Source of the DNA: Octopus bimaculoides
Taxonomy: Eukaryota
Direction: 5' to 3'
NCBI RefSeq assembly: GCF_001194135.2
Contig: NC_068986.1
Location: forward strand, 81,968,410-82,016,597
DNA: 48,188 bases
Shown: positions 16,850 through 19,068 of the stretch, piece after piece
How positions within the stretch are numbered: the stretch's first letter is position 1
How the letters are laid out: every line of letters begins with the position of its first letter
Notes under the pieces: model-generated
Database searches by the model: none
Seen by the model: the letters and a program-made list of their open reading frames with translations, nothing else
What the model was told of the DNA's origin: nothing
Made by a program: the position numbers and the translations under genes

Positions 16850-18890
16850 GGCCCGGAGTACATACTAACAAAAGATTTAAAGCCAGTGACGAAACAATGT
16901 CTACGAAAGCGACAAGTGGTATACAACATCGACAGCGCTAGAAGTTGTATACTTGTAAAAGGAGAAGCAACACATTAACTACACAGGTAAGGCCAGTGGT
17001 CAAAATTAGGCCAGTAATAGATAATATCTGCAAGTATTTCAGCTGTAGGTTTTACTTTCGTTATTGAAGAAACTCTGCCAAGACATTCACTCCGATCTTT
17101 ATTTCAAAAATATATAAATTGAGCCATCATTAATTTCAGATAGTTTCCCTGGCAACAGCTACAAATATCGTCTTGCCACTGGCATTACAGTTGTAGTTGT
17201 AGTGCTTACCACTGACCTTACAGATGGAGTTAGTGAGAACAATAAGCCTTGAAAATGTAGACCAGTAATAGATAAAATCTACATTAAGGTCAGTGGCACA
17301 CACTATCTACTTCTGTAAGGCCAGTGGTACACATCATCTTTAAGGCCAGAGAATACACCGTTAGCATCTCTAAAACAAATGCTACACACTATCTACTTCT
17401 GTAAGGCCAATTGTATATACTATCTCCAGCTATAAAGCAAACAGTACGTATTACTTATTTCTGTAAGGCCAGTGGTGTACACTATCTATATCAGCAAGAC
17501 TAGTGGTACATACTATCTATATCTACCAGGTCAGTGGGTGACACTACCTCCACCTATAAGGCAAGTGTACATATCATCTAGAACTGTAAGGTTATTGGTA
17601 CACATGACGGTGTACATAACCAGTCGTAATTCTGTATCGGCACGGACAGTGATACATCTCTAAGGCTATTGGTACACACTTTTCCATCTGTATGGTCAGT
17701 GGTATACAGTATGTACACACTCAAGACTGATGGTACACATCTACATCAGTAAGGTCAGTAGTATAAGCTAGCTGCACTTATAAAGTTAATGGTACACTCT
17801 ACCTGCATCTGTAAGACGAGTAGCGCACTCTATTCCATTAATAAATTCCAATAGTACACACCGTGTACAACTGTAAGGTCAGGAGTAGATACTATATATT
17901 TAAGGCTAGTGGCATACACTGTCTATATTTAGTGGGAGACAGTGGGAGACACTACTTCCATCTATAAGGCAAGTGTACATATTATCTTGAACTGCAAGTC
18001 ATTGGTACACATGTCAGTGTAACATGGTCAGTGGTATACACTAACTCTACCTGTAAGGCTATTGTTGTACGTCATTTCTATCTATAAGGTATATGGTATA
18101 TACTATGAATATCTGTAAGGCTAGTGGTGCAGATCATCTCCATCTATAGGACCAGTGCTACACACTAAGTATATGTGTAAGGCTATCAGTAAACACTATC
18201 TACACTTGTAAGGCCAATGGTGACCACTAGGCTAGTGGTAGACAATATCTTCATCAGTAAAACCAGTGATATACTCTATCTATGTCTGTAAAGTCAAAGG
18301 TACACAATATTTCTGTAAGGTCAGCGGTATACAGTTCCTTCATCAGAAAGGCCTATAAAACATATTACCTACATCTGTAAGGTCCAGCTTTACACACTAT
18401 TTATATCTGCAAGACTAATATTACGCAATATATCTGTAAGGCCACTATTACACATCATCTCCATATATAAGGCCAACGCTACACACTATATATGCAAGGC
18501 AAATAGCACATACTGCCGCTGTCTGTAAGGACAGCACTACATACTATCTATATGCATAAAGCTGGTGGTACACACTATCTATATCTGTAAGGCCTCTGGT
18601 ACACACTATCTACAGCGTTAAGAACAGCCGTAAACACTATCTACATATCTAAGTAAATATTTTCTCCATGTACAAGATGAATAGTACACACTGTCTAGAA
18701 CTGTAATACCAGTGATGCATACTACTGACATCAGTTAAGCTAGAGGTACGACTGTCTCCACGAGTAAGACGAGTGGTAGACACTATATTTTCAAGACTTA
18801 TGCTTCTCACTATTTCCATCTGTAAGGCCAGTGGTAAACACTATAACTATAACTTTAAGGCCAGTGACGAACTATAATTACATCTGTAAC
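16850..18890 (+). repeat. Degenerate 31-bp tandem satellite (consensus ctgtaaggccagtggtacacactatctacat), roughly 55-60 units
   Basis: A 31-bp period is measurable, for example unit cores at 18567, 18598 and 18629. Units are more decayed left of 17020. Confidence 0.92.
17023..17260 (-). repeat. Inverted copy of 18783-19041 inserted into the satellite, flanked by the 14-bp direct repeat ccagtaatagataa
   Basis: Reverse-complement alignment is about 90% identical in the non-satellite part, with one ~22-bp indel. The direct repeats lie at 17011-17024 and 17262-17275. Confidence 0.9.
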
Positions 18891-19068
18891 AAACGATATT
18901 TATAGCTGTTGCTAGGGAAACTATCTGAAATTAATAATGGTTCAGTTTATGTATTTTTGAAATAAAGATTGGAGTGAATATTTTGGCAGAGTTTCGTCAA
19001 TGACGAAAGTAAAACCTACAGCTGAAATACGTGCATATATTTCTTACTATCATTAGATGCATGATGAA

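What the first reader, a model, noticed from the sequence alone, without database searches (positions are those of the whole stretch)
16850..19041. 31-bp satellite containing an inverted, TSD-flanked copy of its own right boundary
Seen: 17023-17260 is the reverse complement of 18783-19041, covering about 3 satellite units plus ~150 bp of non-satellite flank, with about 90% identity in the flank part. It sits inside the array between two exact copies of ccagtaatagataa (17011-17024 and 17262-17275). This gives ~240-bp inverted arms around ~1.5 kb of tandem repeat. Inference, three options: (a) a templated insertion during repair or TPRT of a boundary-spanning transcript; (b) the ~240-bp module is itself a small mobile element that seeds 31-bp arrays; (c) a foldback/Helentron-like element whose interior expanded into satellite. 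A transcript across the locus could form a long dsRNA stem with the satellite looped out.
Basis: partly seen in the sequence, partly recalled or inferred. Interest (0 to 1): 0.7.

Follow-up and report, generated by a model that had tools for sequence, protein, structure and literature searches.

The report
Inverted local duplication inside a decaying minisatellite
A 237-bp piece of a degenerate 31-bp tandem array, made of a 150-bp non-repeat island plus three repeat units, was copied and re-inserted upside-down 1.5 kb away in the same array with a short flanking duplication; it looks like an old, ordinary structural scar with no sign of function.

Summary
17023-17260 is the reverse complement of 18783-19041: 210 matches, 28 substitutions, one 21-nt gap, 88% identity, K2P 0.13. 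It is flanked by two exact copies of CCAGTAATAGATAA. Removing the insert and one copy restores the 31-bp register, so this is a real duplicative insertion, not chance or a palindromic assembly chimera.

Three corrections:
- The "satellite" is a strongly decayed minisatellite. In-phase 14-mers are about 56% identical.
- The 150-bp "flank" is probably an island inside the array, because at least one unit in correct register follows it (about 1% of control segments score as high).
- The flanking duplication may be 19-22 bp with 1-2 mismatches, and both junctions show imperfect 9-10-nt source/target similarity.

Best reading, about 0.45: a one-off, DNA-level, microhomology-guided templated insertion from the nearby source. 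Main rival, about 0.3: LINE-machinery retroposition. SINEs in the window have TSDs of 9-15 bp and no poly(A), and the piece could belong to a dispersed satellite-carrying family. Foldback and Helentron readings fail tested features.

The decisive test, a genome-wide copy count, could not be run because no collection on hand holds this genome. No function is indicated. Interest is low.

The parts
16730..17010 (+). Left, strongly degenerate part of the 31-bp array (variants such as GTAAGACAAGTAGTAGAT)
   Evidence: Weak nhmmer unit hits at 16787, 16878, 16913 and 16987. Local alignment to the core array scores 31-39, reached by no more than 0.2% of control segments.
17011..17024 (+). Left copy of the flanking duplication, CCAGTAATAGATAA (may extend to 17029-17032 with 1-2 mismatches)
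17023..17171 (-). Inverted copy (L) of the 150-bp non-satellite module
   Evidence: 149 nt, 91% complementary to 18893-19041.
17177..17260 (-). About three satellite units carried by the insert, inverted relative to the surrounding array
   Evidence: 84 nt, 86% complementary to 18783-18866. Holds the only - strand unit hit in the locus, at 17221-17200.
17262..17275 (+). Right copy of the flanking duplication, CCAGTAATAGATAA
17285..18886 (+). Core of the 31-bp array (about 50 units), including an old ~406-bp higher-order duplication (17285-17628 versus 17691-18036)
   Evidence: nhmmer unit hits and self-BLAST.
18783..18866 (+). Source-side satellite units homologous to the insert
18867..18892 (+). 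Last partial unit next to module R; 21 nt of it are absent from the inverted copy
   Evidence: Alignment gap.
18893..19041 (+). 150-bp non-satellite module (R), the presumed source. It contains an 8-bp-stem hairpin, TTTCGTCA-A-TGACGAAA, that is not conserved in copy L.
   Evidence: No Rfam or tRNA match.
19042..19065 (+). Start of a probable degenerate satellite unit right of the module. Positions 19052-19065 also form the 5' TSD of the SINE.
   Evidence: score 29, 1% of controls.
19066..19283 (+). Later insertion of a tRNA-like SINE, with TSD ATTAGATGCATGAT / ATTAGATGTAAGAT (12 of 14 identical). It is not part of the structure but interrupts its right side.
19284..19385 (+). 3' TSD of the SINE, followed by 2-3 further probable degenerate satellite units (e.g. 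CTGTGCCAAGTCGTACAC)
   Evidence: the later units were judged by eye only.

Best explanation
A 2.6-kb, old and decaying 31-bp minisatellite (about 16730-19385) contains a 150-bp non-repeat island near its right end. In one event, a segment of about 259 bp (the island plus the three units to its left, 18783-19041) was copied. The copy was laid down in inverted orientation 1.5 kb to the left, inside the same array, and 14-22 bp of the target were duplicated on either side.

I think the most likely route is DNA-level and local. During replication or break repair in the repeat, a 3' end left the array at about 17024-17032. It annealed through short imperfect similarity to the opposite strand at the end of the island, copied about 260 nt, and returned to the array 14-22 nt behind its point of departure, again at a short similarity. 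This is a microhomology-mediated template switch of the MMBIR/FoSTeS type, or fill-in of a staggered break with a templated patch.

Since then both copies have drifted apart neutrally (K2P 0.13, transitions:transversions 20:8), and the insert lost or the source gained 21 nt.

Shown: the inverted copy, the flanking duplication, the restoration of register, the junction similarities, the divergence, and the absence of other copies in 48 kb.
Inferred: the order of events, the DNA-level mechanism, and the absence of function.

That this is a real, TSD-flanked, inverted duplicative insertion I rate at about 0.85. That the route was a DNA-level local template switch I rate at about 0.45.
For: - Source and copy lie 1.5-1.7 kb apart in the same array, and they are the only two copies in 48 kb. 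For a local templated event this proximity is expected. For genome-wide retroposition it is a coincidence unless the family is very abundant.
- Both junctions show imperfect similarity between source and target, read. At the outer junction the target AAAATCTACA and the source AATATATGCA match at 7 of 10 positions. At the inner junction the target AAAAT-TAG and the source AAAATATAG match at 8 of 9.
- The flanking duplication is exact over 14 bp and restores the register.
- Nothing at the copied end looks like a retroposon tail. There is no poly(A). The only AATAAA lies about 75 nt upstream of the end. There is no Rfam, tRNA or pol III-type head, and no significant RNA structure (z = -0.66 and -1.55).
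- The array probably continues beyond the module. So the copied end is not an evident element terminus, and no TSD brackets array plus module as a unit.
- The arms differ by 12% and by a 21-nt indel, which excludes a perfect-palindrome artefact.
Against: - A clean 14-bp or longer duplication is the classic mark of endonuclease nicking plus TPRT. SINE insertions in this same window carry TSDs of 14, 15, 11-12 and about 9-10 bp, and they also lack poly(A), ending in ...ATT. The insert's outer end likewise reads ...ATATT.
- Template-switch events need not leave a flanking duplication.
- The junction similarities are imperfect and AT-rich, so they could be chance.
- The genome-wide copy number of the module is unknown, so a dispersed family is not excluded.
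Confidence: 0.45

Rival explanations
1. Retroposition by LINE machinery (TPRT). An RNA ending at the outer end of the module was reverse-transcribed at a staggered nick in the array, 5'-truncated after three units, and this gave the 14-22-bp TSD. There are two versions. In (i), module plus 31-bp units form the 3' part of a dispersed, non-autonomous, VNTR-carrying retroposon (SVA-like in layout), and this is a nested insertion of one family member into another. In (ii), the event was a one-off capture of a local transcript.
For: - The TSD length matches that of four SINE insertions in the window: 14, 15, 11-12 and about 9-10 bp, one of them 5'-truncated.
- Those SINEs have no poly(A) and end in ...ATT. 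The insert and its source both end in ...ATATT at the point where homology stops.
- The insert consists of exactly one end of the module plus a variable length of units, as 5' truncation would produce.
- Octopus genomes, if this is one, carry active RTE-clade LINEs (PMC9115989).
- A short LINE RT-like fragment lies 650 bp away, so such machinery has been active in this region.
Against: - There is no poly(A), no LINE- or SINE-like tail similarity, no terminator or cleavage signal at the right distance, and no promoter-like head.
- Version (ii) requires an insertion 1.5 kb from its source, which is very unlikely for retroposition.
- Version (i) needs an abundant family, yet there is no third copy or second array in 48 kb.
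- Version (i) also needs the right-hand copy to be an insertion, but no TSD was found for it, and satellite units seem to continue on its far side.
Confidence: 0.3
2. A foldback-type or long-TIR DNA transposon spanning 17023-19041. Its arms consist of an outer 150-bp domain plus inner tandem repeats, and its right arm or interior expanded to about 50 units.
For: - The layout 'outer unique domain plus inner tandem repeats in inverted arms' is that of Drosophila FB and Tetris elements. This rests on my own knowledge; Tetris is cited in PMC10048060.
- Degenerate array lies on both outer sides and the better-conserved array lies between the two modules.
Against: - The outer flanks carry no duplication (...TAATAGAT | element | TCTTACTA...).
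- The rare 14-mer CCAGTAATAGATAA brackets only the left arm, which this model leaves to chance. Only 2 of 1891 in-phase pairs are identical.
- All interior units except three share one orientation.
- There is no other copy in the window.
Confidence: 0.07
3. A Helitron/Helentron-type non-autonomous element carrying satellite repeats, as in oysters and in Drosophila DINE-1.
For: - Mollusc satellites are often carried by Helentron-type elements (PMC10048060, citing Vojvoda Zeljko 2020).
- The right module has an 8-bp-stem hairpin about 32 nt from its outer end.
Against: - A flanking duplication is present, whereas rolling-circle elements make none.
- The termini are not 5'-TC / CTRR-3'.
- The hairpin is broken in the left copy and lies too far from the end.
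- There is no Rep/helicase remnant nearby.
Confidence: 0.03
4. An assembly artefact: a paralogous copy was wrongly threaded into the array in a gap-rich short-read scaffold.
For: The window has 11 N-runs, so it comes from a draft scaffold, and repeat arrays are error-prone.
Against: - The locus lies in a gap-free stretch, 12514-21809.
- The arms differ by 12% and by an indel, so this is not a palindromic chimera.
- The shared exact words at the junctions are only 14 bp, too short to mis-join a de Bruijn graph at usual k.
- A mis-join would not produce a register-restoring duplication.
Confidence: 0.05

Closest known systems
Microhomology-mediated templated insertions (FoSTeS/MMBIR-type template switches)
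   Same: A segment of a few hundred bp is copied from a template within a few kb and inserted in either orientation. There is short similarity at both junctions, sometimes with a small flanking duplication or deletion. De novo duplications in flies, including an inverted one with microhomology, are attributed to this route (PMC11226609).
   Different: A clean flanking duplication of 14 bp or more is not a required or typical mark. The junction similarities here are imperfect. Nothing shows the event directly.
5'-truncated LINE-mediated retroposition; composite VNTR retroposons of the SVA type
   Same: There is a variable-length TSD of 9-20 bp, truncation from one end only, and (for the SVA layout) an internal array of 30-50-bp units next to a unique 3' module. 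TSD lengths match the SINEs in this window.
   Different: There is no poly(A) or recognisable LINE tail, no evidence of a family, and the source lies 1.5 kb away in the same array.
Tandem-repeat-carrying mobile elements of molluscs (Helentron-borne satellites of Crassostrea gigas; tandem-repeat-containing MITEs of Donax trunculus and oysters)
   Same: A non-repeat module is joined to a short tandem array, in a mollusc-like genome where satellites are often dispersed by transposons (PMC10048060, PMC8268682).
   Different: Those elements are multi-copy, with defined termini and either no TSD or a short one. Here there are only two copies, a long TSD, and no Helitron or MITE termini.
Foldback transposons (Drosophila FB, Tetris)
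   Same: Inverted arms are made of an outer unique domain plus inner tandem repeats. From memory, FB arms even contain 31-bp repeats.
   Different: No TSD brackets the whole structure. The interior array is unidirectional. The flanking duplication brackets the left arm alone.
Orientation switches and dyad symmetries inside satellite arrays (e.g. Tribolium madens, PMC13081366)
   Same: A block of units lies in inverted orientation within a tandem array.
   Different: Those are large-scale features of abundant satellites. This is one 237-bp block with a non-satellite part and a flanking duplication.

Membership tests
MMBIR/FoSTeS-type templated insertion | Template lies close by (within kb) on the same molecule; either orientation allowed | tested here: met
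   Source 18783-19041 and copy 17023-17260, 1.5 kb apart and inverted. No other copy in 48 kb.
MMBIR/FoSTeS-type templated insertion | Microhomology between source and target at both junctions | tested here: inconclusive
   7 of 10 positions match at the outer junction and 8 of 9 at the inner one (read). The matches are imperfect and AT-rich, and no formal chance estimate was made.
MMBIR/FoSTeS-type templated insertion | One-off event, not a repeated family | not testable with these tools
   The host genome is not in any searchable collection.
LINE-mediated retroposition (TPRT) | Target-site duplication of variable length, about 7-20 bp | tested here: met
   14 bp exact, possibly 19-22 bp. SINEs in the window have 9-15 bp.
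LINE-mediated retroposition (TPRT) | Defined 3' end with poly(A), a microsatellite or a LINE-derived tail | tested here: not met
   The end reads ...GCATATATT. It has no poly(A) and no similarity to the SINE tails or any other sequence in the window. The local SINEs also lack poly(A), so this weakens the case without excluding it.
LINE-mediated retroposition (TPRT) | Dispersed copies sharing the same 3' terminus and truncated at different 5' points | not testable with these tools
   Only two copies are available, and the host genome is not searchable.
SINE or small-RNA-derived retroposon | tRNA-, 5S- or 7SL-like head with an internal pol III promoter | tested here: not met
   Rfam at E<=1 gives only a chance S15-leader hit, and ARAGORN finds nothing.
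Helitron/Helentron non-autonomous element | No target-site duplication; insertion at an AT or TT site | tested here: not met
   A 14-bp duplication flanks the insert.
Helitron/Helentron non-autonomous element | 5'-TC ... CTRR-3' termini with a hairpin 10-20 nt from the 3' end | tested here: not met
   The ends read AATATCTGCA... and ...AATGTAG. The hairpin in copy R is about 32 nt from the end and is not kept in copy L.
Foldback / long-TIR DNA transposon | TSD flanking the pair of inverted arms | tested here: not met
   The flanks ...TAATAGAT and TCTTACTA... share nothing.
Foldback / long-TIR DNA transposon | Both arms built of tandem repeats in mutually inverted orientation | tested here: inconclusive
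   The left arm has 3 inverted units. All other units (about 50) face one way and there is no middle domain. This would fit only as an extremely asymmetric element.
MITE (the 150-bp module alone) | Terminal inverted repeats plus a short TSD | tested here: not met
   The module ends CGATATTTATAGCTGT / ACAGCTGAAATACG pair imperfectly, but the fold is not better than shuffles (z = -0.66 and -1.55), and no TSD flanks the module.

The most novel reading that the evidence does not exclude
The 150-bp module with its attached 31-bp units is the 3' part of a dispersed, non-autonomous retroposon. Like SVA in hominids, it would carry a VNTR, be mobilised by LINE machinery (RTE-type in cephalopods), and seed 31-bp arrays wherever a truncated copy lands. 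The locus would then be one family member nested in another, and the paired arms would be a by-product able to form a 240-bp dsRNA, a possible ADAR or small-RNA substrate in an animal known for heavy RNA editing.
Probability: 0.2. Interest if true: 0.5.

Novelty: new member of a known kind. Interest (0 to 1): 0.18.

Why it matters
As it stands, it matters little. It is a tidy single example of how a tandem array acquires an inverted block, with both junctions and the flanking duplication still legible. It also shows that a 'boundary' of a decayed array can be an island inside it. It would matter more if the module proved to be a multi-copy, satellite-carrying retroposon. That would add an RNA-mediated route for satellite dispersal in molluscs, where Helitron-type and MITE carriers are the known ones. 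It would also supply many long inverted repeats as dsRNA sources.

Tried and rejected
- Searching for other copies of the module or junction outside the window:
  - Two exact-pattern scans of metagenome contigs gave nothing and then three chance 20-mers with no extension.
  - Exact-product look-ups of four ORFs in or near the locus found nothing on record (junction ORFs at 17136-17303 and 16945-17067, an array ORF at 17472-17663, and a nearby repeat-family ORF at 13217-13642).
  - Homologue searches with the junction ORF and with a nearby C2H2 zinc-finger ORF found nothing.
- Sampling the host genome through proteins that contain the SINE reading frame. The search gave only three hits, on contigs of 0.5-2 kb. 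That is too little sequence, so I did not pursue it.
- Searching paper full texts for the SINE sequence string and for cephalopod satellite literature. No description of this repeat was found.
- Looking for a TSD bracketing array plus module as one inserted unit. None was found in 13000-18900.
- Testing for an RNA-family, tRNA or structured-RNA identity of the module. None was found.
- Testing whether the right flank is reverse-oriented satellite. This was rejected: the minus orientation scores no better than shuffled versions of the flank (45-48 of 300 shuffles reach it), while the plus orientation scores 29.
- The twin-priming and hairpin-cDNA models were considered and dropped. The inverted part duplicates the very end of the direct part, and the duplication brackets only the inverted block.
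- Site-specific insertion into the unit was considered. The two copies abut different unit positions in opposite orientations, so it has no support.

Full report
**Context.** The window is eukaryotic draft sequence.
- It has 11 runs of N, dozens of microsatellites and G+C of 20-43%. There are no Rfam matches at the curated (gathering) thresholds and no tRNA genes.
- It holds many copies of a ~220-bp tRNA-like SINE beginning GGCGGCGAGCTGGCAGAA. From memory this SINE resembles the abundant one of Octopus genomes. That is a recollection, not a test.
- The locus lies in a gap-free stretch, 12514-21809.

**The observation.**
- The repeat finder reports arms 17023-17171 / 18893-19041 (149 nt, 91%) and 17177-17260 / 18783-18866 (84 nt, 86%).
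- A global alignment gives 210 matches, 20 transitions, 8 transversions and one 21-nt gap: 88.2% identity, K2P 0.13.
- This is by far the strongest self-similarity in the locus, at 261 bits. Direct repeats within the array reach at most 130 bits at 66-70% identity. The duplication is therefore younger than most of the array's unit divergence.
- A unit profile finds + strand units continuously from 17285 to 18884 and weaker ones from 16787 to 17032. The only - strand unit lies inside the insert.

**The flanking duplication.**
- CCAGTAATAGATAA occurs at 17011-17024 and 17262-17275 and nowhere else.
- Of 1891 pairs of in-phase 14-mers, two are identical: this pair, and one belonging to an internal ~406-bp duplication. 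Mean identity of such pairs is 56%.
- Both copies share the same five departures from the consensus CCAGTGGTACACAC, so they are copies of each other and not two similar units.
- Removing 17025-17275 gives ...TTAGGCCAGTAATAGATAAAATCTACATTAAGGTCAGTGG..., an array in register.
- The insert between the copies is 237 bp.
- Read against the intact right-hand copy, the left copy matches the target for 22 nt with two mismatches. The true duplication may therefore be 19-22 bp, which fits the 12% divergence of the arms.
- Both junctions show imperfect similarity between source and target: AAAATCTACA versus AATATATGCA at the outer junction, and AAAAT-TAG versus AAAATATAG at the inner one (read).

**Corrections to the description.**
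- The 'satellite' is a decayed minisatellite, and TRF reports only two short 31-bp pieces of it.
- The 150-bp segment is probably not the array's boundary. A SINE (19066-19283) with its own TSD, ATTAGATGCATGAT / ATTAGATGTAAGAT, sits 25 bp to its right.
- With the SINE removed, the flank reads TCTTACTATCATTAGATGTAAGATACTTGGTA. That is the unit's three conserved blocks (ACTATC, TGTAAG, TGGTA) at the correct 6- and 5-nt spacings.
- Its best local alignment to the core array scores 29. This score was reached by 1 of 300 shuffles and by 1% of 600 control segments from the window; the reverse strand scores at background level.
- By eye, two more unit-like pieces follow, up to about 19385.
- The module thus looks like an island between a better-kept core and a degenerate right edge, mirroring the degenerate left edge at 16730-17010.

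**What the module is not.**
- There is no third copy in the window, by BLAST or by profile.
- There is no RNA family, tRNA or pol III-type head.
- Folding is no better than for shuffles.
- An 8-bp-stem hairpin is present in the right copy only.
- No open reading frame spans it.
- No TSD brackets array plus module as a unit.

**Mechanism.** The structure requires a duplicative insertion at a staggered site, or a template switch that returned 14-22 nt behind its point of departure. Two routes fit.

(1) *A DNA-level local templated insertion.* It explains at once why source and copy lie 1.5 kb apart in one array, why the copy is inverted, why both junctions lie at short similarities, and why the copied end has no retroposon tail. 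Such events, including inverted ones with microhomology, are documented (PMC11226609).

(2) *TPRT by LINE machinery.* SINEs in this window have TSDs of 14, 15, 11-12 and about 9-10 bp. One of them is 5'-truncated. They lack poly(A) and end in ...ATT. The insert's TSD falls in the same length class, and both module copies stop being alike at ...ATATT. RTE-clade LINEs are active in octopus (PMC9115989), and a short RT-like fragment lies at 19687-20004.

Against route (2):
- Retroposition 1.5 kb from the source is improbable unless the piece belongs to an abundant family.
- An abundant family would in turn require the right-hand copy to be an insertion as well, and no TSD was found for it.

I put route (1) at about 0.45 and route (2) at about 0.3.

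**Rejected readings.**
- A Helitron/Helentron origin conflicts with the TSD and with the termini.
- A foldback element spanning 17023-19041 has no duplication at its outer flanks and cannot explain a rare 14-mer that brackets only the left arm.
- An assembly artefact is unlikely. The arms differ by 12% and an indel, the exact junction words are only 14 bp, and a mis-join would not restore the register.

**Function.** Nothing suggests one. The substitution pattern (20 transitions to 8 transversions) and the indel look like neutral decay. If the + strand were transcribed, the arms could pair almost continuously: cofold gives -326 kcal/mol, and many transitions become G-U pairs. This is a physical possibility only.

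**Limits.** The decisive test is the genome-wide copy number and context of the module. It could not be run. Metagenome scans, exact-product look-ups and all three homologue searches show that the host genome is essentially absent from the collections on hand.

**Verdict.** The locus is a new example of a known kind of event, and interest is low.

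Noticed in passing
window 19107-19234 and 19497-19625: Two SINE copies lie in inverted orientation 260-340 bp apart, 83-84% complementary (I2 and I4). This is a second potential RNA hairpin right next to the locus. The minus-strand copy is 5'-truncated, with a TSD of about 9-10 bp (AAGAGGTAGA).
   Followed up: partly
window 17285-17628 versus 17691-18036: An old ~406-bp (about 13-unit) higher-order duplication lies inside the array, at 69.6% identity over 352 bp. 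It contains the only other identical in-phase 14-mer pair, at 17561 and 17969.
   Followed up: partly
window 16500-16650: A different, degenerate ~26-bp tandem repeat (consensus GTCACAACAGGAACATAGCCTCTAGC; TRF 16562-16622) sits to the left of the 31-bp array, followed at 16664-16702 by a 19-bp duplication.
   Followed up: no
window 8086-8223: Another short array of 31-bp period (AGTGTACAGTATATTAGAGTACAAATATACT, 4.5 copies, 68% matches). The unit profile of the main array does not hit it, so any relation is distant at best.
   Followed up: partly
window 19687-20004 (+): A short ORF carries a LINE reverse-transcriptase-like motif (SFQPIALLCTEFEILVKVLARML). There was no Pfam hit at E<=0.1. It is probably a small fragment of a non-LTR element.
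   Followed up: partly
window 11593-11970 (+): An ORF with two C2H2 zinc fingers (Pfam zf-C2H2, E=1e-6) is cut off by an N-run at 11971. No homologue was found in the protein collection.
   Followed up: partly
window 13220-13666 (-) and 42317-42562 (-); 28645-28869 (+) and 45640-46071 (-): Two further dispersed repeat families are visible as shared ORF translations (...QQKQE.RVRESCG.RVQQGS...NTHNA.SGNRNRDP..., and ...AVEM.CD..G.KLYRPL...). Neither has a Pfam match.
   Followed up: no
window 661-1546, 2743-3427, 10756-11053, 11971-12513, 21810-21819, 28080-28231, 28869-29088, 30259-30533, 34053-34089, 34825-34960, 40467-40985: Eleven runs of N, mostly next to microsatellites, mark a gap-rich scaffold-level assembly. 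Any conclusion about repeats in this window should be rechecked on a long-read assembly.
   Followed up: no
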